Shown: one piece after another, positions 21,364 through 33,983 of the stretch | Layout: every line of letters begins with the position of its first letter | Numbering within the stretch: position 1 is the stretch's first letter | IMG/VR virus record: IMGVR_UViG_3300046517_002304 | Span: 1-64,000 of that record | Length of the DNA stretch: 64,000 nt | Strand: one strand, 5' to 3' | Made by a program: the position numbers and the translations under genes | The notes under the pieces: generated by a model | Told to the model about the DNA's origin: nothing | Databases searched by the model: none | What the model saw: the letters and a program-made list of their open reading frames with translations, nothing else

Positions 21364-22539
21364 TTATCCGTCCAATTCTTGTTCATCAACAATATCTTGC
21401 TCTGCTAATGTACTCTGGGATGCAGACGTAGCCTTGCCAAACATATCAATATAATACTGCACATCTGATACATCTTCGGCATCTACAAGCTTAGGGCATT
21501 GTAGCAATACTTCAGCGGGCACATCATTTCTCTCTTGGCTAGATTTAAAGCTAACTTCTTCTCCCCCCGTATATTCTAAACCAACCTTATAGTTTCCTTT
21601 TGACCCAGTTATTCTTCCTGATCTTACTAAAGAATCTAGCATGCCTGAAAATGGAGCAATGCCCATATCAAAAAACAAAAACATAGATTCAACATTTTGA
21701 AATGGCTTAAAGCATTTGTTCTTAACGTTAGAGACATTAACTCTAATACCTATAACATTGTCTAACGAATCTTTAATGCGCTTTGATGCCCTAGTTTGCA
21801 TTCTTAGGCTCGCATAGTAAGGAATTGACGTACCGCCGGTTGGACTTTCTGTCGGACCAAACATTACGCCTATCTTACTTCTTAGCTGGTTAATAAAAAT
21901 TACACTAACATTATTTTTATCTAATACACCGCCTAATACACGAAGCTGCTCTGATATAACTTTTGCGCGCTCCCCTGGACGGGTTACCCCGCCGCCTGCG
22001 GCCTTACGAGCCGCTAGTGATAGGTCCATCATATCCACTTCCACGCTTTCACGCTCACTAGGACTAGCTGCGATTGAATCATAAACTATAACAATCGGTT
22101 TTTCCTTAGCAACCTTTTCTCGTAATACGCGAATAATAGTATGAATCTTAGCAAATCCTTTTTCTAAAGAATCAACTTTTACTATAATTGTTTGCTTCGC
22201 TGACAATCCCGAAACCTTAATGGCAAATTCTTTTGATAAAGAATTCTCTGCATCAATGAAGACCCCAATTCCCCCACACTTTTGAACACCGCGCAGAATG
22301 TTGGTAGCAAATAAAGTTTTGCATGACGACGACATTCCAAACAACTCTATAATTCGTCCGCTTGGTACTCCCCCGCCGCAAAATCGGCCAGAGCACGCAA
22401 AATTAAGAGCAAGATTTCCTGTATCAATCCATGTAGATACACTATCAATCTTATCTAAAATATCTCCGCCAATATCAGCGGCCAATCCTTCAAAATCAAC
22501 TTCTACTTCGTTTCCTTTATCAATTTTCTTTTTTGCCAT
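21364..22539 (-). CDS. uvsX: RecA/UvsX recombinase
   Basis: DTGNLALN, GRIIELFGMSSSCKT, FIDAE, YDSIA, INQLRSKIGVMFG, KNK. Confidence 0.92.
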   Translation of the reverse strand: MAKKKIDKGNEVEVDFEGLAADIGGDILDKIDSVSTWIDTGNLALNFACSGRFCGGGVPSGRIIELFGMSSSCKTLFATNILRGVQKCGGIGVFIDAENSLSKEFAIKVSGLSAKQTIIVKVDSLEKGFAKIHTIIRVLREKVAKEKPIVIVYDSIAASPSERESVEVDMMDLSLAARKAAGGGVTRPGERAKVISEQLRVLGGVLDKNNVSVIFINQLRSKIGVMFGPTESPTGGTSIPYYASLRMQTRASKRIKDSLDNVIGIRVNVSNVKNKCFKPFQNVESMFLFFDMGIAPFSGMLDSLVRSGRITGSKGNYKVGLEYTGGEEVSFKSSQERNDVPAEVLLQCPKLVDAEDVSDVQYYIDMFGKATSASQSTLAEQDIVDEQELDG

Positions 22540-22549
22540 TACCTATTCC

Positions 22550-22828
22550 TTATCTTAATTTAATTAAACCATCATCTACTTCAAAGCTAATTTGAGTCTT
22601 GTCATTCTTAATGACCGTAATATGCGCATTCTTTCCTTTGCCGCGAATAATCTCTACATCAACCATACCGCTAATACTCTGCCCAGACTGGGTAAATATC
22701 TTGTGGTATCGTGAAATAGAACAACGTACTCTAGAAACATGGCAGTGCTCTGGATCTACTTCTGCCTCTTTAATAATAGAATTAATGTTAGTCAGCTTGT
22801 TAAGACCTTCAAATTTCATCTCTAGCAT
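22550..22828 (-). CDS. Hypothetical protein
   Basis: 92 aa in a coupled run. Confidence 0.6.
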   Translation of the reverse strand: MLEMKFEGLNKLTNINSIIKEAEVDPEHCHVSRVRCSISRYHKIFTQSGQSISGMVDVEIIRGKGKNAHITVIKNDKTQISFEVDDGLIKLR

Positions 22829-23091
22829 GATGCTTTCCCTTTTTTAACTTTGCCTCTAAAAACTTTCATCTCAACCATAAACTTGTCACAAAACTCATCA
22901 AAAAAATCATCTATATTAAAATTATCTTCATTATAAACTAATCTTAACAAAAGATGCTTTTCAATCTTGCCGTCTTTATTTTTCTTTGACACTGGTCCAG
23001 CGACCATATCAAATGGAGTGTCGGCTTCCTTTACAAATTCTAAACTCTTAATCATTGATGTCGCTATCAATTCTATCTTGCCGCACTTCAT
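22822..23091 (-). CDS. Hypothetical protein
   Basis: 89 aa in a coupled run. Confidence 0.6.
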   Translation of the reverse strand: MKCGKIELIATSMIKSLEFVKEADTPFDMVAGPVSKKNKDGKIEKHLLLRLVYNEDNFNIDDFFDEFCDKFMVEMKVFRGKVKKGKASC

Positions 23092-23260
23092 TAATTAAAT
23101 CAGATAGCATCTGCTGCATAGACTGACATTCGTCATTGCTTCCTGTAGCAAAAAATCGCCACTTATCAGCACAATAAATCTCTAAACAACTTTCACACCA
23201 AGGTTCATCTTCTGTTTCAACAATTCTAATTCTATTCATTTTTGCACCTCTACGAGCCAA
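23048..23260 (-). CDS. Hypothetical protein
   Basis: Short ORF; true start may be MNRIR at the ATGA overlap. Confidence 0.45.
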   Translation of the reverse strand: MARRGAKMNRIRIVETEDEPWCESCLEIYCADKWRFFATGSNDECQSMQQMLSDLINEVRQDRIDSDIND

Positions 23261-23475
23261 CCAAGGGGATTTCCAAAAAACCTCGCCGGAGCATTGTGGG
23301 GAATCTTAAGCACTTTATTTAGATCGCCCCACTCAACTGAAAGTTTTCTAGAACTTCCTTTTCGCCTAAATTCTATTCGGTCATGATACATCGTAACAAT
23401 AACCGGTCCTTTAACTCCAAAGTTATCAGAAACCTCTAACTCTCTCTTCACCGGCTTTTCAAGCTTTGTGGCCAT
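23236..23475 (-). CDS. Small basic hypothetical protein
   Basis: 79 aa, AAGGA SD. Confidence 0.7.
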   Translation of the reverse strand: MATKLEKPVKRELEVSDNFGVKGPVIVTMYHDRIEFRRKGSSRKLSVEWGDLNKVLKIPHNAPARFFGNPLGWLVEVQK

Positions 23476-23492
23476 GATAACTTTCCTTTATG

Positions 23493-23557
23493 AACTCGCC
23501 ACTGAAATTATTATAAAAATTCACCTCCTCAGGGCATCAGTGGCGAGTTTGTTTTTT
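23493..23557. repeat. Perfect 13-bp inverted repeat with 31-nt loop containing TCACCTCCT, followed by a T-tract
   Basis: AACTCGCCACTGA (23493-23505) / TCAGTGGCGAGTT (23537-23549). Confidence 0.9.
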
Positions 23558-23654
23558 AAAGTATGTTAACTAAAGTAATTCATTATAAATAACAAGCATA
23601 GTGAATTTTATCATCTGTCTATAGCCTGTTTAAATCATTTCAATAGCCAATACT

Positions 23655-24560
23655 TTATAGGTCGTCAATATTAATATTCTTCAAAAAATCGTCGTCTGTA
23701 AGAGCCATGTCTACGTCAGCAGTAGCAAAATCTTCCTTCTTAGACGAAGAAGCGGCCACCTTTGTAACTGTAGCTGGTGCTTTATCAAATGGAGCACGCT
23801 CCACTTTTACAGACTCATCAACCTCTAGACCGCGAAAAATATTTACTTCTTTTAATAGAACGTCAAACGGCTGTGGCTTCTTCCAAGAATTTAGATCATG
23901 GCATTCAGCAAGCCACTCCTTGCAAACCTTCTTATCCTTATGCAAGGGACTTGCGTCCATAAATTCGCTACTCTTCCAGTTTGGATATTCACCCTTAAGT
24001 TCTCGGACGCAATTTAGATCACGGCCAGTTTCAATATCCGTAATATCGCCGAAGCCCTTCTTGTTAAGAAGTGGATTGCCTACGATTGACTTGATAATGT
24101 AAGTGTGAAGTTCTTTTCCTGCACTCAAAATCTTATGAAAGACATCGTACTTTGCTTCGCCCTTTTCGTCAATTTCCTTGCGGACAACAACATTATAGAA
24201 ATAACGTTCAACTGGCTTAATAGAACGAGCCTGTGCTTGTAGTTCTTTTACTTGATTTTCACTTAGATCAGGATTCTCTGACTTCTTCCATAGCGAAGAA
24301 TAAAATTCGCATACTGGACACTGACCCTGCCACATTCCACCGACTAAATTCTTTGAGCACTGAAATCGCTTACCGTTAATAGTATGATTTCTAATAGCCA
24401 CATAAATTGTATCGTTATCATGGCTAGGAGGAAGAATGCGAACTATTGTGCTGCATTCGCCAGGCGGGAAGCGAACAAAGTCCTTAAGAAAATTCTTATT
24501 CTGTCCATTACCTTCAACTCGCTCCAACTCGCTCTTAAATGCTTCTAAATTAATACCCAT
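23655..24560 (-). CDS. gp32-like single-stranded DNA-binding protein
   Basis: VRILPP, H..C..CPVCE Zn site, RYFYNVVVR, DITDIETGRD, acidic tail; start MGINLEAF after GGAG. Confidence 0.85.
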   Translation of the reverse strand: MGINLEAFKSELERVEGNGQNKNFLKDFVRFPPGECSTIVRILPPSHDNDTIYVAIRNHTINGKRFQCSKNLVGGMWQGQCPVCEFYSSLWKKSENPDLSENQVKELQAQARSIKPVERYFYNVVVRKEIDEKGEAKYDVFHKILSAGKELHTYIIKSIVGNPLLNKKGFGDITDIETGRDLNCVRELKGEYPNWKSSEFMDASPLHKDKKVCKEWLAECHDLNSWKKPQPFDVLLKEVNIFRGLEVDESVKVERAPFDKAPATVTKVAASSSKKEDFATADVDMALTDDDFLKNINIDDL

Positions 24561-24645
24561 TTTCTTCTCCGTATTGTTAAAAAATTGTTTCTTGATAGTA
24601 CTTATATCGTCCTGGTTTTTAAAACACATTATATAATTCTGAGAA

Positions 24646-25194
24646 TTATTTACAATCTTGTGTTTTTGCCATTAGCTTACCAACAGAATCTTTGCAAAAA
24701 CTTGCCTGTCTTCGTTCAATTAATTCAAAAATTACATTAACTAGCAAATTTTGTTCCGTAAATGATTGAGTTAATTCATCGCATACAAGCGGATCTTCCG
24801 TCAAAAACTTAAACCCAGCATCTTTAAACTTCTGCATCTCGCTCTCAACCGATTCTGTAGAATATGCACAATGATGTACCCCGCCAATGTTACCTCTATT
24901 AGCAACATATTTTGCTACGATGGACTCTGGATCGGAACTAGAAGAAATAAACAAATCTGGCATAGTCTGATACCTAATTCCATCATGCTCAATAATTCTA
25001 GGAGCGTCCTTTTTATCTTTTAGTCCTTTAGGCATCAAGACCGTGCATTTCGTACTTTGCGTGCTTCCATCAGGAAACTCGGGTTCAAATTTATCTGCTA
25101 TCTCATAACCAAACAAATTAACAAACATATCGCAGGCTGCGTCATGATTATTGCGGTTGATACGAAAAGCAATATGGTCTAAAGAATTAATCAT
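24646..25194 (-). CDS. VOC-family protein resembling the HPPD C-terminal domain
   Basis: LDHIAF, GGVHHCAY, LTQSFT, FELIER..F (H/H/E metal triad). Confidence 0.75.
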   Translation of the reverse strand: MINSLDHIAFRINRNNHDAACDMFVNLFGYEIADKFEPEFPDGSTQSTKCTVLMPKGLKDKKDAPRIIEHDGIRYQTMPDLFISSSSDPESIVAKYVANRGNIGGVHHCAYSTESVESEMQKFKDAGFKFLTEDPLVCDELTQSFTEQNLLVNVIFELIERRQASFCKDSVGKLMAKTQDCK

Positions 25195-25245
25195 TTATTT
25201 CTCCTTGTGTACATTTATCGGAAGATATAAGAAAATATATTAGCC

Positions 25246-25764
25246 TTATTTTCTGCGATTTAATGGCTTACCAGAATCAGGAATAATTGGCCCGTCATAA
25301 TAAATTTTTCCATCTTCTGTCGGACTAAACGCCTTGTCCAAACCAGGGACCGCCGCAACAAAATAAATAGGATCTGCAACTATGGCAATCCCGTAATCAT
25401 TTACAACTAAATAATTACCATTGCTCATATCTTGTATAATAGGATATGACTTGCCAATAGTAAATCCTTTTATAGGACTTCTTCTACCTATCTCTTCCGG
25501 CAAAAAAACCTCTCTTCTTATTACTTTTGCCTGCTTCCTATTTGTCTTAGGCAAAACATCAACCTTAATTCCTGAATCATACTTCTTCTTTTTTTCTAAA
25601 TCGCTCAATATTTCATATGCATCGCTCACTTCTCTAAATTTTACGGTGGACGTACCATTATTGCTATCAGGATGATATTTCTTTGCTAGTTTTTTATATG
25701 CTCGCTTAATATCATCCTGTGATGCCGATAATGACAGCTCTAATATCTTATAGAGATCAGCCAT
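25246..25764 (-). CDS. J-domain protein fused to a shared SH3-like module
   Basis: DLYKIL..IKRAYKKLAKKYHPD..AYEILSD. Confidence 0.9.
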   Translation of the reverse strand: MADLYKILELSLSASQDDIKRAYKKLAKKYHPDSNNGTSTVKFREVSDAYEILSDLEKKKKYDSGIKVDVLPKTNRKQAKVIRREVFLPEEIGRRSPIKGFTIGKSYPIIQDMSNGNYLVVNDYGIAIVADPIYFVAAVPGLDKAFSPTEDGKIYYDGPIIPDSGKPLNRRK

Positions 25765-26471
25765 TACCGTCTCCTGAGCGGCTGCATGGAATCTTGAGTT
25801 TCAGGAATAATCTCACCGCCATACTGGAGTTTATTCGCCTGCATCATCTGATTTCGCATTTCAGCTTCACGACCCTGGATGTACTCGGCGCTTTCCGCTA
25901 TAGGTCCATCAAATATAATGCCTTTTCCAATACTACTAAAATATGCGGCATTTACAGCCATTTCCATGTTTACATCATTCACTACTACGTAATTTCCAGC
26001 ATCAGTTTCTCTAATAATTCCGTACTTTCTACCAGGAGTTAAATTTCTAATCGGACTAGCTCCAGCTATATCAGGCGAAAATACTTCTTCTCTAATAACT
26101 TTAATTTTAGGTTTTGGAGGAGCGACCGGAACTGGCTTGTCAACAACATGTGTTACAAGCTGCGGCTTGTCTTCCTCCGCAGTAATTCCGCCATCTACTA
26201 CGCCACTCACACTAAATGAAAACTTACGATTTTTAATCACAATGCCATCTTTAGTTTCTTTAAACGAAACCTTACGCTTAACATATTCATATGGCTCAAC
26301 GTCAACAATAAAAATATCTCTACGAGCTAACTGCGATGCAACAAAACTAGCAACCTGCTCTAATGGGACTTCTTCCTCTTTCTTTCCCAGTGTTTTGCGC
26401 ATAGTATGGTCTTCTGTGTCATACCTTCCGCTTTCCAATCTCTTATGGTAATGAAATATTAGCTCAAACAT
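25764..26471 (-). CDS. Hypothetical protein carrying the shared SH3-like module
   Basis: C-terminal half aligns by eye with the J-protein C-terminal half. Confidence 0.75.
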   Translation of the reverse strand: MFELIFHYHKRLESGRYDTEDHTMRKTLGKKEEEVPLEQVASFVASQLARRDIFIVDVEPYEYVKRKVSFKETKDGIVIKNRKFSFSVSGVVDGGITAEEDKPQLVTHVVDKPVPVAPPKPKIKVIREEVFSPDIAGASPIRNLTPGRKYGIIRETDAGNYVVVNDVNMEMAVNAAYFSSIGKGIIFDGPIAESAEYIQGREAEMRNQMMQANKLQYGGEIIPETQDSMQPLRRR

Positions 26472-26480
26472 ACTTTTTCC

Positions 26481-27071
26481 TTATTTAGTAATAATACCGA
26501 CACCATACCGAGTATTAAATTTTTCAAAATTTCTATTTCTAACCTTACAAAATACATTAAATATTTCTGGATTAACGTCAATGTAATCTACTACAAATAT
26601 AACATCATAATTTAGTACATCCCAAGCAAAATTCAAGTATTCGCTCATTTTTTCCTTATCTTTTTCTCTTATAAAAACAATTTGCGGCCGTTGATCTTTG
26701 ACTAATTTCTTGAACCCTTCATCTAATTGCCCATAATAAAAGTAAAATTTGTCCTTGTAAACACGTCTTATGTTATGCCTAGTCATGTTATCTGGGTAAT
26801 AATCATTTGTCTTATTTTGAAATGCTGTAAAACTCTTGACACTGGGACATCCGCACAAAAAACTACCACTACATATTCCTAGTCCTAATCCAAACTCTAC
26901 ACAGCTACTCGGGGTAATATCCTGTCCTAAGTAGTAATAAAACGGCAAGTACATCGGATCAGAAAGCTCTGAACTTTTATAATCATTTTCGCTATTAAGG
27001 CTAAATTTATTCAACAATACACTTGCAATATTATTTTTTTTAAGTTTTTGGCGGATTTTTTCACAGTCCAT
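26481..27071 (-). CDS. Methyltransf_24-like protein, degenerate
   Basis: YYYLGQ..PSSCVEFGLGLG resembles 30768..31367 but lacks the IDGxH motif. Confidence 0.55.
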   Translation of the reverse strand: MDCEKIRQKLKKNNIASVLLNKFSLNSENDYKSSELSDPMYLPFYYYLGQDITPSSCVEFGLGLGICSGSFLCGCPSVKSFTAFQNKTNDYYPDNMTRHNIRRVYKDKFYFYYGQLDEGFKKLVKDQRPQIVFIREKDKEKMSEYLNFAWDVLNYDVIFVVDYIDVNPEIFNVFCKVRNRNFEKFNTRYGVGIITK

Positions 27072-27104
27072 AAATTTATCATAGCGAAAGCAGCTAAATA
27101 TTGC

Positions 27105-27830
27105 ATGATAGAATGCATCCAAGTGTGTGTGAATTACGGAGATTTCTTAGCCTGGACCCTGCCGTTTAACCGAATGCAGTTTGATAATATGGTAATTGTC
27201 ACATCGGTAGAAGATACCTTAACTCAAAAAATTTGCGAATACTGGCATGTTCGTTGTATAAAAGTAAGAATCAATAAAGATGAAGGTTTCCCAAAAGGAA
27301 AACTAATCAATATCGGGTTAGAAAACCTAAAACAAACTGATTGGGTTGTTCATATGGATGCGGACATCTACCTACCCCCGCACTTCAAGCGAACTATGGA
27401 AACCATTACATTAGACAAAGATGCAATCTATCATATGGATAGAATGAATTGTAGTAATTTTGCCGACTGGATTCGCTTTCTACAAAAACCATTAGTGCAA
27501 CATGAAAATGATATTTTTGTTCACTCTGGCCCATTTCCTACCGCGACTAGAGTGGCCAGCCTAAGCCGCGACGGAATTATAGCTATTGGATTTTTTCAAT
27601 GTTTTCATCAAGGTACTAAAAACCTTAAGTATAATGAAGAACATACAAGCGCAGCAAGAGGCGACATGCTATTCGGCATGAAGTTTCCAAGAGACAAAAG
27701 GCAATTCTTACCAGAATGTATTGCTATTCATCTTGAAACTAAAATAAAAGAAGGCGAACCACATGGACAAAACTGGGATGGACGCAAGACTCCACCATTC
27801 ACTATAGATGGACCGTCCAATGCAAAATAA
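27105..27830 (+). CDS. GT-A/GT2-like glycosyltransferase
   Basis: KGKLINIGL, WVVHMDADIYL (DxD), GFFQCF. Confidence 0.75.
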   Translation: MIECIQVCVNYGDFLAWTLPFNRMQFDNMVIVTSVEDTLTQKICEYWHVRCIKVRINKDEGFPKGKLINIGLENLKQTDWVVHMDADIYLPPHFKRTMETITLDKDAIYHMDRMNCSNFADWIRFLQKPLVQHENDIFVHSGPFPTATRVASLSRDGIIAIGFFQCFHQGTKNLKYNEEHTSAARGDMLFGMKFPRDKRQFLPECIAIHLETKIKEGEPHGQNWDGRKTPPFTIDGPSNAK

Positions 27831-28131
27831 CAAAAAGCACAATCCGGAACTACTCAATCACATAACCGTTCGTCATAAAAACGAAAAGGTGGAATTTGTT
27901 TACTTATCAGAACAAAAAAAGGACGCCAAAAAAACGTTTCATCAACTATGCCATCACTTTGATGGGGCTGGATATAATCCATGCGTAATCAATGATGAAA
28001 ATGGAAATCAATTAGCTAAGCTTATATCGGTTTACACCGGCAAGAAAGCCAAGTCAGCATTAGGTGATTTCTGGGGCGGATTATTCCTCGGAGCAACGGT
28101 CACTGCTCTTATTGTTATATGCATACTATAA
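27820..28131 (+). CDS. Hypothetical protein with C-terminal TM helix
   Basis: FWGGLFLGATVTALIVICIL. Confidence 0.6.
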   Translation: MQNNKKHNPELLNHITVRHKNEKVEFVYLSEQKKDAKKTFHQLCHHFDGAGYNPCVINDENGNQLAKLISVYTGKKAKSALGDFWGGLFLGATVTALIVICIL

Positions 28132-28616
28132 TGTTAAATTTCACAGAATGGCTCACTTTTAATGAAGGTCTAAAAATTATAAACGTAGACCCAGAAGAAG
28201 ACTGGGAAATGGGACAAGAGGCAGAAAATATCGCTCACAAAGTCAACATACACATTTCTAGAAATAAAAACCTAACCCTAGTAGCGCTAAATGATCAGGA
28301 AGAAGTAATAGGAGCAGTCTATACTTCATATGAAAAAGACCACAGCGCATCAGAAAATGCGGGCGAGGAAATGTTCCATTTTGATTTTGACGTGGTGGTA
28401 GATCCTAGGTGGCAAGGATATGAAATGGTAGGAATAAAACTAATAAAGGCCGCAGAACAGGAAAGAAAGCATTTAGATATTATGTATGGCCATAAATCAT
28501 ACACCAGAACATGGGTTGTGAACCCGCGATTAGCTAAAATACTTCAACATCCAAGGTTTGGATATGAATCCGAAGGTGAACACGAAGGCGGATCTCACCA
28601 CCTAACAAAGTATTAA
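28131..28616 (+). CDS. GNAT-like acetyltransferase with capsid-targeting-like N-terminus
   Basis: VVVDPRWQG...VGIKLIKAA (motif A), VNPRL..FGY; starts MLNFTEWLTFNE. Confidence 0.65.
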   Translation: MLNFTEWLTFNEGLKIINVDPEEDWEMGQEAENIAHKVNIHISRNKNLTLVALNDQEEVIGAVYTSYEKDHSASENAGEEMFHFDFDVVVDPRWQGYEMVGIKLIKAAEQERKHLDIMYGHKSYTRTWVVNPRLAKILQHPRFGYESEGEHEGGSHHLTKY

Positions 28617-29902
28617 ACAGCTTTTTGTTTAACTAAATCTAATTCAACCCCATTAACTCCAGCTAAGGCTCTCCAGGTTTCTTCCATGGACAACTCTCTA
28701 CTAACCTTAATGTCTTCGGATTCGGATAAAGATTTATCGTCCTTAATAGAAAAAACAATATCGCCATTACTACTAAATTTTTTATCAATCTTCGAAGCAT
28801 ATTCAGTTGAACGCTTAGCCCCAAATATATTCATCTGATATTCATAACTAACCACAACGTTAGTTTGTGGAGGAACAATATTCCAATCTAAATGTATTGT
28901 GCTATTATCAATGTCAGCATTGCCGCGCAAAATATAAAACTCATCCTGATCGCGCGAGGGGGCCAATATTAGGGCGTTGCTATCGTTAACGGTAAACAAG
29001 CAAATAACATCATCATCTACGTAAACAGAACCTTTAATCGACGACGGATTAATGTTTTTATACCCTAGCCGATATGTGGTATGCTTGCCATTAAAGCCAA
29101 TATGAGAAACCGACTCATTGATAGACTTACGCACTTCTTCGCACCACTTTTCGCTCTTACCAACTCCAGACTTATGTCTAGCTAAACTTTCTTCGGTAAT
29201 CGCTTGAAAATTAGCCGCATCTACGACAATCGTATTACCGCAATCATCTATGGTTGTATAAAGTATTCTTGTGTCATCTGATGCCTCGCATAAAATAGGG
29301 TATATCTTTTCATTAGTCAATTTGTGTTTCGGATTATAGTTAATCGGAGCACTGGTAAAAATTTCATACCTTAATATGCCAGACTTATCAAACGGCTCTT
29401 TGCCTTCGGCCTGACGCTCACACTTAGGTAAATCTGCATCATTATTTTTAACTGCTATTACTTTTCTATTTTCATCCTTGGGTGGAGTTTGTTTAATATT
29501 CCAAGTTAATTTTAAAATACCGTTTCCAAAAGTGGCTTCTGGATCACCAATTAGATTGTCGGGCAAAACAATATTTCTAGTAAATGAAGACCTCTTTAGT
29601 TCTTTCTGATAAAAAGTAGCCTGACTATACGAAACATCACTTTCCATCTTGCCGGAAATTTGCAGGATTCCAGATGGAAGAATTTCTACTTGAATATCTT
29701 TATGTTGTACCCCTGGTACGGCGGCCTCTACAATATACTTGCCATCATTGGTGGTTATTGTGTCAGCTTTTGGGTAGCTGCCATCTTTAAGAATGTTTTT
29801 ATAGTTTCTGCGGCCATCATCAAAAAACTGGCTAAAAAACTGATCAAACTGGCGTTCAATGGGGGTAAAAAACTCATCGCGACGGGACATTAAATTGTTC
29901 AT
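28613..29902 (-). CDS. Hsp20 fused to the shared SH3-like module and a further beta domain
   Basis: YPKADT..AAVPG..ELKRSSFTRNIVLP..ATFGNGILKL, followed by about 280 extra residues. Confidence 0.85.
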   Translation of the reverse strand: MNNLMSRRDEFFTPIERQFDQFFSQFFDDGRRNYKNILKDGSYPKADTITTNDGKYIVEAAVPGVQHKDIQVEILPSGILQISGKMESDVSYSQATFYQKELKRSSFTRNIVLPDNLIGDPEATFGNGILKLTWNIKQTPPKDENRKVIAVKNNDADLPKCERQAEGKEPFDKSGILRYEIFTSAPINYNPKHKLTNEKIYPILCEASDDTRILYTTIDDCGNTIVVDAANFQAITEESLARHKSGVGKSEKWCEEVRKSINESVSHIGFNGKHTTYRLGYKNINPSSIKGSVYVDDDVICLFTVNDSNALILAPSRDQDEFYILRGNADIDNSTIHLDWNIVPPQTNVVVSYEYQMNIFGAKRSTEYASKIDKKFSSNGDIVFSIKDDKSLSESEDIKVSRELSMEETWRALAGVNGVELDLVKQKAV

Positions 29903-30016: not shown

Positions 30017-30730
30017 TTACCTACAATGCAAAAACATATTGTGTTTTAGCTCAAAATTATGCTCACATTTTTGTCCATTTAGATAAACTTCATATCCGTT
30101 AGAATACAAAATGTCTAACAGCTCCTGCGGATCAAAGCCGTGATACTCCATACTGACCTTTTCAAAAAGATGTGTTTCAATTTCCAGCTTCGGCTTCTTC
30201 TTAAGCATCTCTTTAGCTCCACGCAATACGGCTATTTCATATCCCTCAACGTCAATTTTAATAACATCTGGTGCAATCCCCAAATCATCTAAAGCTATAG
30301 TTTCTACTTCGGTTCCACGGCTATCAACCATTTCTTCAGATATAAACTTCTTCATCCCGCTTTTTTCATCTGCTATATTACTGTATATCTGATAATCTAT
30401 AACGTCATTTAGCTGAAAATTACGCTTTATAATAGGAATATTGCTTGGATTAGCTTCAATAACTATAATTTTAGACTTAGACCGCATTACCATGCTTAGG
30501 GCAACGCTTCCTATGTTGGCGCCTACATCTATAACAACATCGCCAGGAGAAATCAAATCTCTTAAAAAAAGGTTTCTTTTATTCTGAACTTCAACAGCAT
30601 CATCCCAAGAACATTTTAAATCATCGCAAATAGTTTTTAGACCATACCAGTTTTCATCACGATCATTGGATATGCAAAGCTTAAACCAATTATCCCAAAC
30701 TTTATGATGCTCAATATACGGGTATACCAT
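30017..30730 (-). CDS. FkbM-family methyltransferase
   Basis: IDVGANIG, IEAN, IKIDVEGYE.AVLRGA. Confidence 0.9.
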   Translation of the reverse strand: MVYPYIEHHKVWDNWFKLCISNDRDENWYGLKTICDDLKCSWDDAVEVQNKRNLFLRDLISPGDVVIDVGANIGSVALSMVMRSKSKIIVIEANPSNIPIIKRNFQLNDVIDYQIYSNIADEKSGMKKFISEEMVDSRGTEVETIALDDLGIAPDVIKIDVEGYEIAVLRGAKEMLKKKPKLEIETHLFEKVSMEYHGFDPQELLDILYSNGYEVYLNGQKCEHNFELKHNMFLHCR

Positions 30731-30767
30731 ATGTTATTTACTATCAAGAACTAATCTAAATATAGCA

Positions 30768-31367
30768 ATGGTAGCCGAAATACAAAAATTAATAGAATCC
30801 TGTGCCAAAACAGAAGATGATATTCTTTCTTTGGTTAAAAATCCAATAGACGATGGCGTGGACTGGCTTGGAAAGGGAACTTACATAGCATACTATGCCA
30901 TAGGGCAATATTTAAGACCAAAAAGCATAGTAGAAATAGGGGTAAGATATGGATATTCCCTAGAATCAATGAGGCGAGGAAGTGGTGAAACCAAACACAT
31001 TTTCTGCTTTGACAACGAGCAAGATTGCCTAGGATCTGGCGAATACGTATTCAATAAATTAAAAGACGTAGAACTTGAGACTTTAGATGTAATCAACGCA
31101 AACACACAAGCGATCAATTCATTAAACATCAATATGAAAATAGACTTAGGGCATATTGACGGATGTCATACCTTTGACGGAGTCTATCACGATTGCATAC
31201 TTGTTTCAAAGGTTATGAAAAGAAACGGGGTTATCTTAGTAGATGATGTTCTACATGGCAAAGATAGCGATGAAGTGAGATGGGGCGTAGATAAATTTTG
31301 CTGGGAGCGCGATATTAAACCAATGGTAATTGAGTGCCATAGAGGGCTATACGTAATTCAACTTTAG
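30768..31367 (+). CDS. Methyltransf_24 family methyltransferase
   Basis: VEIGVRYGYS, HIDGCH, VDDV. Confidence 0.85.
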   Translation: MVAEIQKLIESCAKTEDDILSLVKNPIDDGVDWLGKGTYIAYYAIGQYLRPKSIVEIGVRYGYSLESMRRGSGETKHIFCFDNEQDCLGSGEYVFNKLKDVELETLDVINANTQAINSLNINMKIDLGHIDGCHTFDGVYHDCILVSKVMKRNGVILVDDVLHGKDSDEVRWGVDKFCWERDIKPMVIECHRGLYVIQL

Positions 31368-32332
31368 CCAAAATTAGCAGGATACCCTTCACGAATAAAC
31401 CAAGTCAAAGCTTCACTTACAGTTGGCCTTACCATAGTTTTAAAATTGTCATAAGCCATATCCATGGGATCAGCAATATTATCTTGCATGCTTTTAAGAA
31501 TTCTAGGTAGTAAAAAAATCGTTGGGACGTTAAGATTGTTCGCCAGAAGACCTACCCCACCCGGAAATTGAAATGAAAACTTACACCTTTTAAGACACGC
31601 TAGGGTAATGCCTAAGTGTTTTCCTACTACCATTTCTGTCTTGCAGCCTCTAGACTTCATAATTTCATATACATCCTTAGTGCGGTCGTAATCCCAAGAT
31701 GCTCCTGAAAATAAAAATGAATAATTCCTACACTCTGGTATATTATGCACACCGGTTAAAAACTCAACCCACTCATCGGTATTCCAAATGTTCCATCCTG
31801 GTCTTACCTGTCGATCTTTTTCTTTATTAGAAACAAAGCAAAAAAAGGTATTCGGACCTAATCTTTGCATTATGCTATCTGCTTCATGATAATGTTCTTG
31901 CGGTATATTTATAGGATAATGCCAATCAAGCGGCAATTTAGGAAGCCAATCCGAAAGCTTCTTACTCCGCTCAAGCCATAAATTACATGAAAGATTAATC
32001 TTCCAAGGTTTTCCACAAAGATAATCGTATTTGCCATTACAATCGGCCCAATCATCCCCCAGACAATTTTGCATAACCTCAAAGCTTGTAACAGAATCAT
32101 CATATCCAGCCCAACGAACATTAGGCGATAATAACTGAACAAATTCTTCTGCTCGCCTTAATTCATTCTTGGATGCTACTGATAATAAAATTTCACGACC
32201 AAGCTTTTGTTTAAGGTTAAATATCTTGGCTATTGCCCAATGTATATCTCCCATTCCGGCACAGCACCTAAACTGAATTACATTATGGACCCCAAAATCT
32301 TCGGGGCGATATACTTTTGTATCTACAGGCAT
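31364..32332 (-). CDS. GT9-like glycosyltransferase (divergent)
   Basis: AGMGDIHW, WNTDEW, GASWD, PGGVG; paralog of 12293 and 32994. Confidence 0.55.
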   Translation of the reverse strand: MPVDTKVYRPEDFGVHNVIQFRCCAGMGDIHWAIAKIFNLKQKLGREILLSVASKNELRRAEEFVQLLSPNVRWAGYDDSVTSFEVMQNCLGDDWADCNGKYDYLCGKPWKINLSCNLWLERSKKLSDWLPKLPLDWHYPINIPQEHYHEADSIMQRLGPNTFFCFVSNKEKDRQVRPGWNIWNTDEWVEFLTGVHNIPECRNYSFLFSGASWDYDRTKDVYEIMKSRGCKTEMVVGKHLGITLACLKRCKFSFQFPGGVGLLANNLNVPTIFLLPRILKSMQDNIADPMDMAYDNFKTMVRPTVSEALTWFIREGYPANFG

Positions 32333-32335
32333 TAT

Positions 32336-32992
32336 CTAGCTCCTTATCTTAGAAGACTCGCATCTACTAGAATTTCTAACCACAATCCAGTAACAATGAT
32401 TTTTTCTTAAGTGCTTAACATTATTCCATTTACTAGACTGTAAATTTCCCGCTGACGGGTCGCATTTAATTAACAGGTCACAAGGCGTCATACCAACTTC
32501 TAGGGTAGCATTAACAAAATCCACATGCTGCCATTGGTATCTATGATTATGGACAATATCTGCAATCTTAGCCAAAACAATTCCATTCTTATTTAAAACT
32601 CTTTTCGCTTCTTTTAAAAATGGAATAAACATACCGCTTACATTATCTCCTTCTCTACCTTCGCCGTCAGATGTTATGCCATATGATTTTTCCCAAATTT
32701 TAGAACTGTTCTCAGATGCCGCATTTGTGGGAAGATGTGGAGGGTCAAAAACAATAATATCATATGAGCCATCGGCAAATGGTATAGCGGTAAAATCGGC
32801 CACAACGTCTAAAGACAAATCTGGATTAATATCCATTCTAGTCGGCGCATAGGATGATCCAATCCACATCTTTCCAGAGTTATAGGTAACGTCTAATATT
32901 TTAGGATTTGCTACGGAACTGTGCACTTCTATTAATATCCTAATAGCTTCTACATCACGTCCATTTAGAACAGTCTTATAGCGCTTAGACAT
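32336..32992 (-). CDS. Phage SAM-dependent (probable DNA amino-) methyltransferase
   Basis: ILDVTYNSGKMW, IVFDPPHL, EAKRVL..G. Confidence 0.7.
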   Translation of the reverse strand: MSKRYKTVLNGRDVEAIRILIEVHSSVANPKILDVTYNSGKMWIGSSYAPTRMDINPDLSLDVVADFTAIPFADGSYDIIVFDPPHLPTNAASENSSKIWEKSYGITSDGEGREGDNVSGMFIPFLKEAKRVLNKNGIVLAKIADIVHNHRYQWQHVDFVNATLEVGMTPCDLLIKCDPSAGNLQSSKWNNVKHLRKNHCYWIVVRNSSRCESSKIRS

Positions 32993-32993
32993 A

Positions 32994-33983
32994 TTACCAA
33001 CCATTATCCTTTATAAAATTTAAAATTTCATTCACGCCATGCCGACCATAGTAGCACGGAAAATATGTCTTGCCTGTAACGGAACCGGGCTTAGTCCAAG
33101 CAAATGCCATATCCTCATGAAAAGCAATATAATGTTCGTAACTTATGCTATCGTCATGATTCTTAGGAGTGCGTTTTTGTCTCCACCACATAGCCGTTTT
33201 TGTTCCCATATAATTAGCACAAACTCCAAGTCCAGACTGGTAACTAATCATAAATCTAGCATTTTTAATTACAGCAAGAGTATGCTCGATAGGCCATTGG
33301 CTAATGAAGTTCTTCCACCATAATTTCATTTTAGTTTTAGGTCTAATATTATTGTTATAATACTCTAAATCCCAATCTGCTCCCACAACAATAATTTTAA
33401 CTCCATACGCCTCATGGAGTCTATCGCCTAAATCTACCCATTCTTGGGCAGTAAAAATTAGCCCTCTATTATGACCAGAATGAGAGCAATTTCCACCCTC
33501 TCCGGCTATAAAGAAAATAACATACTCGCCCATAGTATCTTTAAATTTATTTGTGTACTCTTTTTCAGCATCTAACCAATTAAACTCATTGAATATTTCA
33601 AAATTAGATTCAACGTCTGGCAACCAGTCCGAAAGATTAATTCCTCTTTCCAGCGGTGCATTCGGCATCATTACGAAGTCAATATTTTTTAAAGATGGAT
33701 TTTTACCATCAGGAATATATCTATACAGACCATCTTCTGTAGCGAGAGGCCCTTCAAGTAAAACTGGACCATGCCTATTGACATGTGGCATAACATATGG
33801 TTCTACAGAATTAACAAATTTAAATTTTCTTAAGAACTCAATCGCACGACTTTCTATGTTATTAGCATTCCAGACGCCGACCTTCAAATCAATCCTGTTA
33901 TCGCCGTGCTTCTTAACAAGACCTTGTGCTTTAACTAAGCACCATACAGAATCGCCCACGCCTTGAGGAACAAGTATGTTCAT
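32994..33983 (-). CDS. GT9-like glycosyltransferase
   Basis: PQGVGDSVW, VVGADWD, FMISYQSGLG. Confidence 0.6.
   Translation of the reverse strand: MNILVPQGVGDSVWCLVKAQGLVKKHGDNRIDLKVGVWNANNIESRAIEFLRKFKFVNSVEPYVMPHVNRHGPVLLEGPLATEDGLYRYIPDGKNPSLKNIDFVMMPNAPLERGINLSDWLPDVESNFEIFNEFNWLDAEKEYTNKFKDTMGEYVIFFIAGEGGNCSHSGHNRGLIFTAQEWVDLGDRLHEAYGVKIIVVGADWDLEYYNNNIRPKTKMKLWWKNFISQWPIEHTLAVIKNARFMISYQSGLGVCANYMGTKTAMWWRQKRTPKNHDDSISYEHYIAFHEDMAFAWTKPGSVTGKTYFPCYYGRHGVNEILNFIKDNGW

What the first reader, a model, noticed from the sequence alone, without database searches (positions are those of the whole stretch)
25246..29902. One unnamed SH3-like module is fused to a J-domain, to Hsp20 and to a third protein: a possible addressed chaperone system
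Seen: J-protein VIRREVFLPEEIGRRSPIKGFTIGKSYPIIQDMSNGNYLVVNDYGIAIVADPIYF; 25764 protein VIREEVFSPDIAGASPIRNLTPGRKYGIIRETDAGNYVVVNDVNMEMAVNAAYF; Hsp20 fusion ILRYEIFTSAPINYNPKHKLTNEKIYPILCEASDDTRILYTTIDDCGNTIVVDAANF. The first two also share a tail (KIYYDGPIIPDSGKPLNRRK / KLQYGGEIIPETQDSMQPLRRR). Known: J-domains recruit DnaK, and sHsps hold unfolded clients for DnaK/Clp. Inference: the module is a common docking or co-assembly tag that brings a holdase and host Hsp70 to the same phage target. I do not recognise this arrangement from described systems.
Basis: partly seen in the sequence, partly recalled or inferred. Interest (0 to 1): 0.8.

Follow-up and report, generated by a model that had tools for sequence, protein, structure and literature searches.

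The report
Shared SH3-like module on two phage chaperones
In one 511-kb uncultured phage, a small SH3-like domain from a conserved but uncharacterised phage protein encoded next to the DNA-replication genes has also been joined to a J-domain and to a small heat-shock protein, which suggests, without proving it, that both chaperone parts are sent to the same target.

Summary
Three minus-strand genes carry one homologous module of about 63 aa: J (25246-25764), M (25764-26471) and H (28613-29902). J vs M gives BLASTP E=9e-15. A profile built only from other phages finds M, H and J at E=3e-7, 2e-6 and 7e-6, and the next hit is at E=2.1. AlphaFold2 gives an SH3-like barrel. The module is a distant relative of Pfam DUF6501.

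New context:
- M is the module's normal home. It belongs to a family with over 100 IMG/VR loci, on contigs up to 572 kb.
- The family has a novel N-domain, the module, and a tail ending in MPDIRRR.
- It is nearly always encoded in the order methyltransferase-like gene, M, gp32, UvsX.

The two chaperone fusions were found only in this phage:
- None of 79 other M loci carries them.
- None of 64 related Hsp20 loci carries them.
- Word-indexed searches of 5.8 billion protein clusters found nothing.
- The two closest relatives lack the part that could be checked: no J gene in one, an unfused Hsp20 in the other.

J is a class-C-type J-protein, translationally coupled to M. H is the clade's own sHsp, complete through its IxI motif, with a 275-aa extension.

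The "addressed chaperone" reading is plausible but untested, and the ligand is unknown. I rate it a new variant of known kinds, of moderate interest.

The parts
25246..25764 (-). J: a 172-aa class-C-type J-domain protein. It consists of a J-domain, a short basic linker, the module and the tail.
   Evidence: ORF. Pfam DnaJ E=4e-22. Its ATG overlaps the TAA stop of M (TAATG, with GGAG upstream), which indicates translational coupling.
25576..25758 (-). J-domain of J (residues 3-63), with the HPD motif (KKYHPDS).
   Evidence: Pfam PF00226, 78.5 bits against a cut-off of 27.8. HPD motif seen.
25342..25530 (-). Module copy in J (residues 79-141).
   Evidence: Alignment A1. 46% identical to the module of M. 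Independent profile E=7e-6. Sister to the M/P0003/P0005 group in the tree, support 99/78.
25249..25341 (-). Tail of J (residues 142-172), ending DSGKPLNRRK. It is paralogous to the tail of M but lacks M's internal helix.
   Evidence: BLASTP alignment, compared with the family tail.
25764..26471 (-). M: a 235-aa member of a conserved huge-phage family, made of N-domain, linker, module and tail.
   Evidence: AlphaFold2 mean pLDDT 80.9.
26184..26471 (-). N-domain of M (residues 1-96), alpha+beta. It has no convincing match to a known fold or family.
   Evidence: pLDDT 84-96 over residues 1-90, falling to 61 for 91-100. No Pfam, PHROG or PDB sequence match. Only weak structural matches, Z 5.2-5.7.
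25917..26105 (-). Module copy in M (residues 123-185), an SH3-like barrel.
   Evidence: pLDDT mostly 91-95. VIA-align Z 5.0-6.6, rmsd mostly 2-3 A over 51-57 residues, against many SH3 domains. TM 0.81 to a 56-aa Atlas cluster in which 17% of members carry DUF6501.
25767..25916 (-). Tail of M (residues 186-235). It contains a helix at 195-212 and the C-terminal motif DSMQPLRRR (family consensus MPDIRRR).
28613..29902 (-). H: a 429-aa protein made of the clade's sHsp plus a C-terminal extension of about 275 aa.
   Evidence: It is the only one of 66 Hsp20 loci with an extension longer than 13 aa.
29450..29902 (-). sHsp part of H (residues 1-151): N-terminal FF-rich region, alpha-crystallin domain, and the IxI-type motif I149-A150-V151.
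   Evidence: Pfam HSP20 residues 49-151. PHROG 432. Aligns end to end with unfused Hsp20s of related phages, including their C-terminal I-x-I/V.
29189..29383 (-). Module copy in H (residues 174-238). It follows a hydrophilic linker of about 22 residues.
   Evidence: External profiles give E=2.6e-9 and 2e-6. Where this copy came from is unresolved.
28616..29188 (-). C-terminal region of H (residues 239-429): a long helix, then a beta-rich part of unknown fold.
   Evidence: AlphaFold2 pLDDT mostly below 60. No relatives in 5.8 billion protein clusters by word-indexed search. Residues 287-357 match one small ORF in L042.
26481..27122 (-). o213: a Methyltransf_24-like gene, the conserved upstream neighbour of M.
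   Evidence: A homolog lies directly upstream of M in 76 of 79 external loci. Two homologs pass the Pfam PF13578 cut-off.
23655..24629 (-). gp32-type ssDNA-binding protein, the conserved downstream neighbour of M.
   Evidence: Pfam gp32. Found downstream of M in 73 of 79 external loci.
21364..22539 (-). UvsX/RecA-type recombinase, part of the conserved block.
   Evidence: Pfam RecA_N. Found in 69 of 79 external loci at a fixed offset from M.

Best explanation
The SH3-like module, together with the basic tail in M and J, is the ligand-binding or assembly part of M. M is a conserved huge-phage protein that works alongside the replication and recombination genes, in the block methyltransferase-like gene, M, gp32, UvsX.

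In this phage lineage that part was copied twice onto chaperone parts:
1. A partial duplicate of the C-terminal half of M was joined to a J-domain. The result is a class-C-type J-protein, translated in tandem with M.
2. A second copy was placed after the intact IxI motif of the clade's own small heat-shock protein.

Both fusions would therefore be tethered to whatever M's module binds, or to M itself. The J-protein would recruit Hsp70 (DnaK) and trigger its ATPase there. The sHsp would act there as a holdase.

The likely place of action is a replication or recombination nucleoprotein assembly. This would resemble the way DnaJ and DnaK remodel the lambda P-DnaB complex (recalled from the literature, not checked here).

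Shown: homology, fold, domain architectures, synteny, and that the fusions were not found elsewhere. Inferred: that the module binds a ligand, that all three copies bind the same ligand, that DnaK is recruited, and what the target is.
For: - The three copies are homologous.
- The module folds as an SH3-like barrel, a fold typical of binding modules.
- J has only a J-domain with HPD plus the module and tail. It has no G/F region, zinc finger or client-binding C-terminal domains. By established knowledge this is the architecture of targeted class-C J-proteins.
- The stop codon of M overlaps the start codon of J.
- J's module and tail group with M and its closest relatives.
- H keeps a complete sHsp, including the IxI motif, before a flexible linker and the module.
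- M is fixed next to gp32 and UvsX in 69-76 of 79 external loci.
- An unfused Hsp20 sits directly upstream of o213-M in 9 related loci and in L089. The sHsp and M were therefore already neighbours.
- In this genome both extra copies of the module are on chaperone parts. Neither fusion was found in 79 M loci, 64 Hsp20 loci or the large protein collections.
Against: - No binding partner was identified, and no experiment exists.
- The fusions occur in a single phage lineage. All copies recovered are identical, so there is no comparative evidence of selection on them.
- H lacks the shared tail and carries a different C-terminal domain, so J and H need not share an address.
- Because the three genes are neighbours, local recombination could have produced the fusions without any functional logic.
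- No Hsp70 motif was found in the window. The host and its DnaK are unknown.
- 447 kb of the contig could not be read, so further copies on non-chaperone proteins are not excluded. Set against that, the exhaustive profile search showed none.
Confidence: 0.4

Rival explanations
1. The fusions are by-products of local recombination among neighbouring genes and do not share an address. On this view J is a general modulator of host DnaK, like Rki of phage RB43, and the module only supplies a stable C-terminal domain. H is an sHsp with an unrelated extension.
For: All three genes lie within 4.7 kb. Hsp20, o213 and M are ancestral neighbours. The region is rearranged relative to L089. H also picked up a domain (residues 287-357) whose only homolog is a small ORF from the same neighbourhood in L042, which suggests local mosaicism. 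Rki shows that a phage J-protein can act on DnaK itself without delivering clients (PMC3486835).
Against: Two separate copies of the same module both ended up on chaperone parts. The J and H copies differ from each other and probably in age. Both keep the family's core residues, score on an independent profile as well as M itself does, and lie in intact ORFs. J also kept the family's C-terminal motif.
Confidence: 0.25
2. The module is a self-association (co-assembly) domain and M itself is the target. On this view J and H join M oligomers through module-module contacts. They would chaperone, remodel or regulate M, or J would act as a truncated decoy that competes with M.
For: J equals the C-terminal half of M with a J-domain in place of the N-domain, and the two are translationally coupled, which favours co-assembly. 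DUF6501-type relatives occur as tandem arrays of up to 6 copies, so such modules can pack side by side.
Against: Nothing here shows oligomerisation. The AlphaFold2 monomer model gives no information on it, and no multimer prediction was available.
Confidence: 0.2
3. The module plus the arginine-rich tail binds nucleic acid. On this view M is a DNA- or ssDNA-associated accessory factor of gp32 and UvsX, and the fusions place chaperone parts on DNA or nucleoprotein filaments rather than on a protein docking site.
For: M sits in the gp32/UvsX block. The conserved tail ends in RRR or RGR. Fold matches include nucleic-acid-binding small barrels: KOW domains, the Hpy99I N-terminal domain, a PWWP domain bound to ssDNA, and ribosomal proteins eS4 and L21e.
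Against: Most of the best fold matches are peptide-binding SH3 domains. H lacks the basic tail. No sequence feature specific to nucleic-acid binding was found.
Confidence: 0.15

Closest known systems
Rki (ORF 057w) of T4-related phage RB43, a phage-encoded J-domain protein (PMC3486835)
   Same: Both are small phage proteins with a bona fide J-domain (HPD motif) and an orphan C-terminal part. Neither has a G/F region, zinc finger or DnaJ C-terminal domains. Rki is not a generic co-chaperone, and the domain make-up of J suggests the same. Both phages carry T4-type replication genes.
   Different: The non-J part of J here is a recognisable paralog of a neighbouring conserved phage protein (module and tail). 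This points to a phage-side address rather than to action on sigma-32 or on DnaK itself. No phage record in the INPHARED collection matched J residues 97-172. No activity has been tested for J.
Class C (type III) J-domain proteins with a dedicated targeting domain, such as HscB, DjlA, auxilin and polyomavirus large T antigen (established knowledge)
   Same: The architecture is a J-domain plus a specialised binding domain that sends Hsp70 to one client or site.
   Different: The targeting domain here is an SH3-like, DUF6501-related barrel shared with an sHsp and with a protein of the replication gene block. I found no description of one targeting domain shared by a J-protein and an sHsp, though my literature search was limited.
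Phage and bacterial small heat-shock proteins (Pfam HSP20, PHROG 432), including the unfused Hsp20 of related huge phages
   Same: H has the N-terminal region, the alpha-crystallin domain and the C-terminal IxI-type motif. It is 36-47% identical to unfused Hsp20s of related phages and shares their position upstream of o213-M.
   Different: H continues for about 275 aa after the IxI motif (linker, module, helix, beta-rich domain). None of 64 related phage Hsp20s has an extension longer than 13 aa.
Pfam DUF6501 (PF20111) and DUF7244 small-barrel domains
   Same: Both share the core pattern LT-x-GK-x-Y-x-[IV] ... Y-x-[IV]-x-DD-x-G ... F. The hhalign probability is 96.9% (E=1.4e-10) between the module family and DUF6501-positive repeats. 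The Atlas structural match has TM 0.81.
   Different: No module sequence reaches the Pfam model on its own (0 of 57). The module has an extra N-terminal strand (IRxExF-P). It occurs once per protein in a fixed architecture, not in tandem arrays. DUF6501 itself has no known function, and no paper in the searched library mentions it.
DnaJ/DnaK remodelling of replication complexes, such as lambda P-DnaB at ori-lambda and P1 RepA (established knowledge)
   Same: It is a precedent for Hsp70 and a J-protein acting on phage replication assemblies, which is the suspected site of action given M's gene neighbourhood.
   Different: Those systems use the host's generic DnaJ. Here the phage would supply its own addressed J-protein. 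This link is inferred only from gene order.

Membership tests
J-domain proteins (Pfam PF00226) | J-domain profile match above the curated cut-off | tested here: met
   78.5 bits against a cut-off of 27.8, residues 3-63, covering the full 63-position profile.
J-domain proteins (Pfam PF00226) | HPD tripeptide between helices II and III | tested here: met
   The sequence KKYHPDSNNG is present.
J-domain proteins (Pfam PF00226) | Stimulates the ATPase of Hsp70/DnaK | not testable with these tools
   This needs a biochemical assay, and the host is unknown.
Class A/B DnaJ (generic co-chaperones) | G/F-rich region, zinc-finger domain and/or DnaJ C-terminal client-binding domains | tested here: not met
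   Pfam finds only the J-domain. Residues 64-172 are a linker, the module and the tail. J is therefore class-C-type.
Small heat-shock proteins (Pfam PF00011 HSP20) | Alpha-crystallin domain match above the curated cut-off | tested here: met
   39.5 bits against 20.8, residues 49-151. PHROG 432 E=1e-15.
Small heat-shock proteins (Pfam PF00011 HSP20) | C-terminal I-x-I/V motif after the alpha-crystallin domain | tested here: met
   I149-A150-V151 aligns with the I-x-I/V of six related phage Hsp20s.
Small heat-shock proteins (Pfam PF00011 HSP20) | Small subunit that ends shortly after the IxI motif | tested here: not met
   H is 429 aa and has 274 residues after the alpha-crystallin domain. 64 relatives have 13 or fewer.
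Small heat-shock proteins (Pfam PF00011 HSP20) | Oligomeric holdase activity | not testable with these tools
   This needs biochemistry.
SH3-like small beta-barrel fold | Five-stranded barrel that superposes on SH3, Tudor or KOW domains | tested here: met
   For the M module, pLDDT is mostly 91-95. VIA-align gives Z 5.0-6.6 and rmsd mostly 2-3 A over 51-57 residues against dozens of SH3 domains. Foldseek and the Atlas agree. Caveats: Z below 8 is a modest score by the tool's own note, and the H-module model used the M-family alignment, so it is not an independent test.
Canonical SH3 families (Pfam SH3_1, SH3_3 and others) | Sequence match to an SH3 profile | tested here: not met
   No SH3 family was found for any of 57 module sequences at E up to 1.
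DUF6501 (Pfam PF20111) | Match to the Pfam model above the cut-off of 23.8 bits | tested here: not met
   0 of 57 module sequences match.
DUF6501 (Pfam PF20111) | Profile-level homology to DUF6501-positive sequences | tested here: met
   hhalign probability 96.9%, E=1.4e-10 over 39 columns. 12 of the 26 comparison repeats hit PF20111 at E<=0.01, best 3.3e-8. Caveat: the comparison set was found with a module profile.
M family (uncharacterised huge-phage family defined here) | N-domain, then linker, then module, then a tail ending ..MPDIR(R/G)R, encoded between a Methyltransf_24-like gene and gp32 | tested here: met
   The window's M has all parts and the synteny. J has only the module and tail. 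H has only the module. J and H are therefore derivatives, not members.
RB43 Rki family | Homology beyond the J-domain | tested here: not met
   tblastn of full-length J against 50,697 phage records matched at most residues 1-96, never the module or tail.

The most novel reading that the evidence does not exclude
A huge phage encodes an addressed chaperone set. A J-protein and a small heat-shock protein each carry the same SH3-like adaptor domain, borrowed from a conserved replication-block protein. Host Hsp70 and a holdase would then be delivered to one defined viral assembly, probably a gp32/UvsX/helicase nucleoprotein complex or M itself. This would be the first case I know of in which two chaperone classes share one targeting domain, and it would give a way to learn the function of a widespread orphan huge-phage protein family.
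Probability: 0.3. Interest if true: 0.75.

Novelty: new variant of a known kind. Interest (0 to 1): 0.55.

Why it matters
Targeted J-proteins and phage sHsps are both known. I found no description of one targeting domain shared by a J-protein, an sHsp and a conserved viral protein, though my literature search was limited.

If the shared address is real, it would matter in three ways:
- It would show that huge phages build their own client-specific chaperone delivery instead of relying on generic host co-chaperones.
- It would serve as a natural "Rosetta-stone" clue to the M family. That family has over 100 IMG/VR loci, sits next to gp32 and UvsX, and has no annotation in Pfam or PHROGs.
- It would offer a first functional clue for DUF6501-type barrels.

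If the fusions are only local mosaics, the lasting result is more modest: a newly delineated, conserved two-domain family of huge phages with a conserved C-terminal MPDIRRR motif.

Tried and rejected
- **Nucleotide search:** megablast of the 4.7-kb region against 50,697 phage records found nothing.
- **Word-indexed protein searches:** M 118-235, J 72-172 and H 160-429 returned only the query's own clusters or nothing.
- **Family and structure databases:** Pfam and PHROGs on the isolated modules, on the N-domain of M and on the C-terminal part of H gave nothing usable. PDB sequence searches with the M-family and module profiles gave nothing significant.
- **ESM Atlas feature searches:** scores were 0.71-0.74, below the usable range.
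- I removed that row and did not send it again.
- **A discarded alignment:** a composite alignment of full-length H with module fragments (A5) misplaced the fragments on the sHsp part. It was replaced by A6.
- **Structure of H 160-429:** only the module is modelled with confidence. The C-terminal domain stays below pLDDT 60, so its fold is unknown.
- **Origin of the H module:** the tree places it outside the local M/J clade, but the AU test does not reject joining them (p=0.48). The origin is unresolved.
- **Chaperone genes near M elsewhere:** only one J-domain gene was found, unfused, in L074. No Hsp70 or GroEL signature motifs were found in the window.
- **M as a gp59- or gp33-like protein:** I considered this because of its position next to gp32. 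No sequence or fold support appeared in any search, and the comparison rests on memory only, so it is not claimed.
- **Discounted hits:** P0013 and P0014 from the exhaustive search are giant repeat proteins. P0014 carries MBG domains in the matched region. P0013 repeats a TYTLHEE..NGY motif that only weakly matches the module profile. I discounted both as chance similarity.

Full report
**Source and setting**

The window is the first 64 kb of a 511,233-bp IMG/VR contig (IMGVR_UViG_3300046517_002304, also Ga0495630_0000004). It is an uncultured huge phage with T4-type replication genes. These include a DnaB-type helicase, gp32 (23655-24629, minus strand), a UvsX/RecA recombinase (21364-22539, minus strand) and a dCMP deaminase. 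No nucleotide relative exists among 50,697 deposited phage records.

**The observation**

- J (25246-25764, minus strand, 172 aa) has a full Pfam DnaJ domain at residues 3-63 (E=4e-22) and the HPD motif.
- H (28613-29902, minus strand, 429 aa) has a Pfam HSP20 domain at residues 49-151 (E=6e-10) and matches PHROG 432.
- M (25764-26471, minus strand, 235 aa) matches no Pfam or PHROG family.

The shared segment lies at J 79-141, M 123-185 and H 174-238. J and M match by BLASTP at E=9e-15 over the module and the tail. H is only marginal in pairwise comparison, at E=0.003-0.006.

The H copy therefore needed a profile test.
- A profile built from J and M alone finds H as the best non-self hit among the 957 six-frame ORFs of the window, at E=1.3e-4, with noise starting at E=0.26.
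- Profiles built only from other phages find it at E=2.6e-9.
- A fully independent set of 52 modules, fetched through N-domain patterns, finds it at E=2e-6. That score lies between M (2.8e-7) and J (7e-6), and the next hit is at E=2.1.
- 2000 shuffles of the H segment reach at most 6.7 bits, against 27.8 bits for the real sequence.

There is no fourth copy in the window. The fusion junctions recur in independent assemblies from other samples.

**What the module is**

AlphaFold2 on M, using a 51-sequence family alignment, gives a mean pLDDT of 80.9. Most of the N-domain (residues 1-96) and of the module (123-183) scores above 90.

The module is an SH3-like barrel.
- VIA-align gives Z 5.0-6.6, with rmsd mostly 2-3 A over 51-57 residues, against dozens of SH3 domains.
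- The top Foldseek matches in the PDB are YorP, Tudor and SH3 domains.
- The Atlas gives TM 0.81 to a 56-aa cluster in which 17% of members carry DUF6501.

These scores are modest in absolute terms, but they agree across methods.

No module sequence hits any Pfam family on its own. The exhaustive profile search of 1.84 billion representatives did return tandem-repeat proteins that carry Pfam DUF6501 and DUF7244. A profile-profile comparison of the module family with those repeats gives 96.9% probability and E=1.4e-10. The module is therefore a divergent, single-copy relative of DUF6501 with an added N-terminal strand. DUF6501 has no known function, and no paper in the searched library mentions it.

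**The 'third protein' is the module's home**

The same search recovered proteins of 218-265 aa with a fixed architecture:
- a well-conserved N-domain (MGYEI..Y.E...QLARRDI.I.DVEIYEY.KKK..FKE..GGIVIKNKKF.FD);
- a variable linker;
- the module;
- a tail ending in a conserved C-terminal motif, consensus ..MPDIR(R/G)R.

IMG/VR holds 110 such loci. The 80 that were fetched lie on contigs of up to 572 kb. One further member lies in the 595-kb record LR756511.1.

In all 79 external loci the module is attached to the N-domain. The gene order is strongly conserved:
- a homolog of o213 (window 26481-27122) lies directly upstream in 76 of 79 loci;
- gp32 lies directly downstream in 73 loci;
- UvsX follows in 69 loci;
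- an amidoligase gene follows in 51 loci.

Two o213 homologs pass the Pfam Methyltransf_24 cut-off. The N-domain has no convincing match to any fold or family. The family is absent from PHROGs.

**The two fusions are peculiar to this phage**

- None of the 79 external M loci carries the module on a J-domain or on an Hsp20.
- A scan of IMG/VR with the clade's Hsp20 profile gave 64 external Hsp20 loci. None has more than 13 residues after the alpha-crystallin domain, and none has the module.
- Word-indexed searches of 5.8 billion protein clusters with J 72-172 and H 160-429 found nothing beyond the query's own fragments.
- tblastn of J against all deposited phages matched at most residues 1-96, never the module or tail.
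- The closest relative by M identity (P0003, 59%) has M, then a 180-aa gene, then gp32, with no J gene between them.
- The next closest relative (L089, about 44%) has an unfused 202-aa Hsp20, then an o213 homolog, three small ORFs and M.
- One related locus (L074) has an unfused J-domain gene on the opposite strand, with a different C-terminal part. It lies about 1.5 kb upstream of M.

**Anatomy and origin of the fusions**

J is a J-domain, a short lysine-rich linker, the module and the tail. It has none of the G/F, zinc-finger or client-binding domains of generic DnaJ, so it is class-C-type. Its ATG overlaps the TAA stop of M (TAATG, preceded by GGAG), which indicates translational coupling.

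J's module is closest to the local M, at 46% identity. In the tree it is sister to M and its two nearest relatives, with support 99/78. J's tail looks like the tail of M with the internal helix removed. J is therefore a partial duplicate of the C-terminal half of M joined to a J-domain.

H aligns end to end with the unfused Hsp20s of related phages at 36-47% identity. The alignment includes their C-terminal I-x-I/V motif, which is I149-A150-V151 in H. After that motif H continues with a hydrophilic linker of about 22 residues, the module, a long helix and a beta-rich region of unknown fold.

H's module carries the longer loop seen in most family members, not the short loop of the local M/J group. 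In the tree it falls outside that group, but the AU test does not reject joining them (p=0.48). Its origin is unresolved.

Unfused Hsp20 lies directly upstream of o213-M in 9 of 72 related loci and in L089. The sHsp and M were therefore neighbours before the fusion arose.

**How it most likely works**

The following is shown:
- three homologous SH3-like modules;
- a J-protein whose only non-J part is paralogous to the C-terminal half of M;
- an otherwise complete sHsp with the module tethered by a linker;
- M fixed in the gp32/UvsX block.

The following is inferred. The module, with the basic tail in M and J, is a binding or assembly unit. The two fusions would then bring Hsp70 recruitment and holdase activity to M's ligand or to M itself. 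From gene order, the most likely site is a replication or recombination nucleoprotein assembly. The remodelling of lambda and P1 replication complexes by DnaJ and DnaK is a precedent from established knowledge.

I put this at about 0.4. The rivals are:
- mosaicism among neighbouring genes with no shared address, with J acting on DnaK itself as Rki of RB43 does (PMC3486835);
- co-assembly through module-module contacts, with M as the client or J as a decoy;
- a nucleic-acid ligand, suggested by the Arg-rich tail and by KOW-, PWWP- and Hpy99I-type fold matches.

These overlap with one another, and none can be excluded with the tools at hand.

**Comparison with what is known, and verdict**

J meets the tested criteria for a J-domain protein and fails those for class A/B DnaJ. 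H meets the sHsp domain and motif criteria but is atypically long. The module has the SH3-like fold, belongs to no SH3 sequence family, and is related to DUF6501 only at the profile level.

Phage J-proteins (Rki) and phage sHsps are both known. Co-occurrence of DnaJ, DnaK and Hsp20 in large phages has been described (PMC12619734). I found no description of one targeting domain shared by a J-protein, an sHsp and a conserved phage protein, though my literature search was limited.

I rate it a new variant of known kinds, with interest about 0.55.

Noticed in passing
window 21364-27122; loci L010-L088: A strongly conserved gene block marks a large clade of uncultured huge phages, with over 100 IMG/VR loci on contigs up to 572 kb. 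The order is a Methyltransf_24-like gene, M, gp32, UvsX, an opposite-strand gene of about 205 aa, and an amidoligase.
   Followed up: partly
window 25767-25800; C-termini of about 50 family members: The M family ends in a conserved C-terminal peptide, consensus (D/E)xMPDIR(R/G)R. It looks like a short linear motif with an unknown partner. J keeps a degenerate version (DSGKPLNRRK).
   Followed up: partly
window 28832-29044 (H residues 287-357); L042:5472-5900: Part of the C-terminal extension of H matches a small ORF lying between gp32 and UvsX in a related phage contig (BLASTP E=2e-9, 31% identity). No other homolog turned up in any fetched locus. H may therefore be a mosaic of three pieces from this neighbourhood.
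   Followed up: partly
L074:7840-8418 (minus strand): A related phage has an unfused J-domain protein with HPD (Pfam 23.8 bits, below the cut-off; jackhmmer E=2e-16). It lies about 1.5 kb upstream of that phage's M gene, on the opposite strand, and has an unrelated C-terminal part.
   Followed up: partly
window 27048-28616 (plus strand); L089:10194-11184: Three plus-strand genes are wedged between H and o213: a GT2-like glycosyltransferase, a 107-aa ORF and a GNAT-like gene. In the relative L089, homologs of the first two lie on the other side of M. The region has therefore been rearranged.
   Followed up: no
window 30017-33983: Upstream of H lies a run of modification-type genes: Methyltransf_21, Methyltransf_24 and several ORFs of 220-330 aa with no Pfam hit. 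This suggests a sugar or DNA modification cluster.
   Followed up: no
window 24646-25194 (minus strand): A glyoxalase/VOC-superfamily protein of 182 aa (Pfam Glyoxalase, 24.7 bits against a cut-off of 20.6) sits between J and gp32. It is absent from all 79 external M loci. The closest relative's contig may have it, as a 180-aa gene in the same place.
   Followed up: no
proteins P0006, P0007, P0008, P0011, P0012, P0016, P0022: These are proteins made of 2-6 tandem DUF6501-type barrels with the core pattern LTxGKxYxV...YxIxDDxG...F. The domain has no known function, and no paper in the searched library mentions it.
   Followed up: partly
window 22550-23475 (minus strand): Four small ORFs of 70-92 aa lie between gp32 and UvsX. 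They have no Pfam hit and no homolog in the external loci. This intergenic slot is variable across the clade.
   Followed up: no
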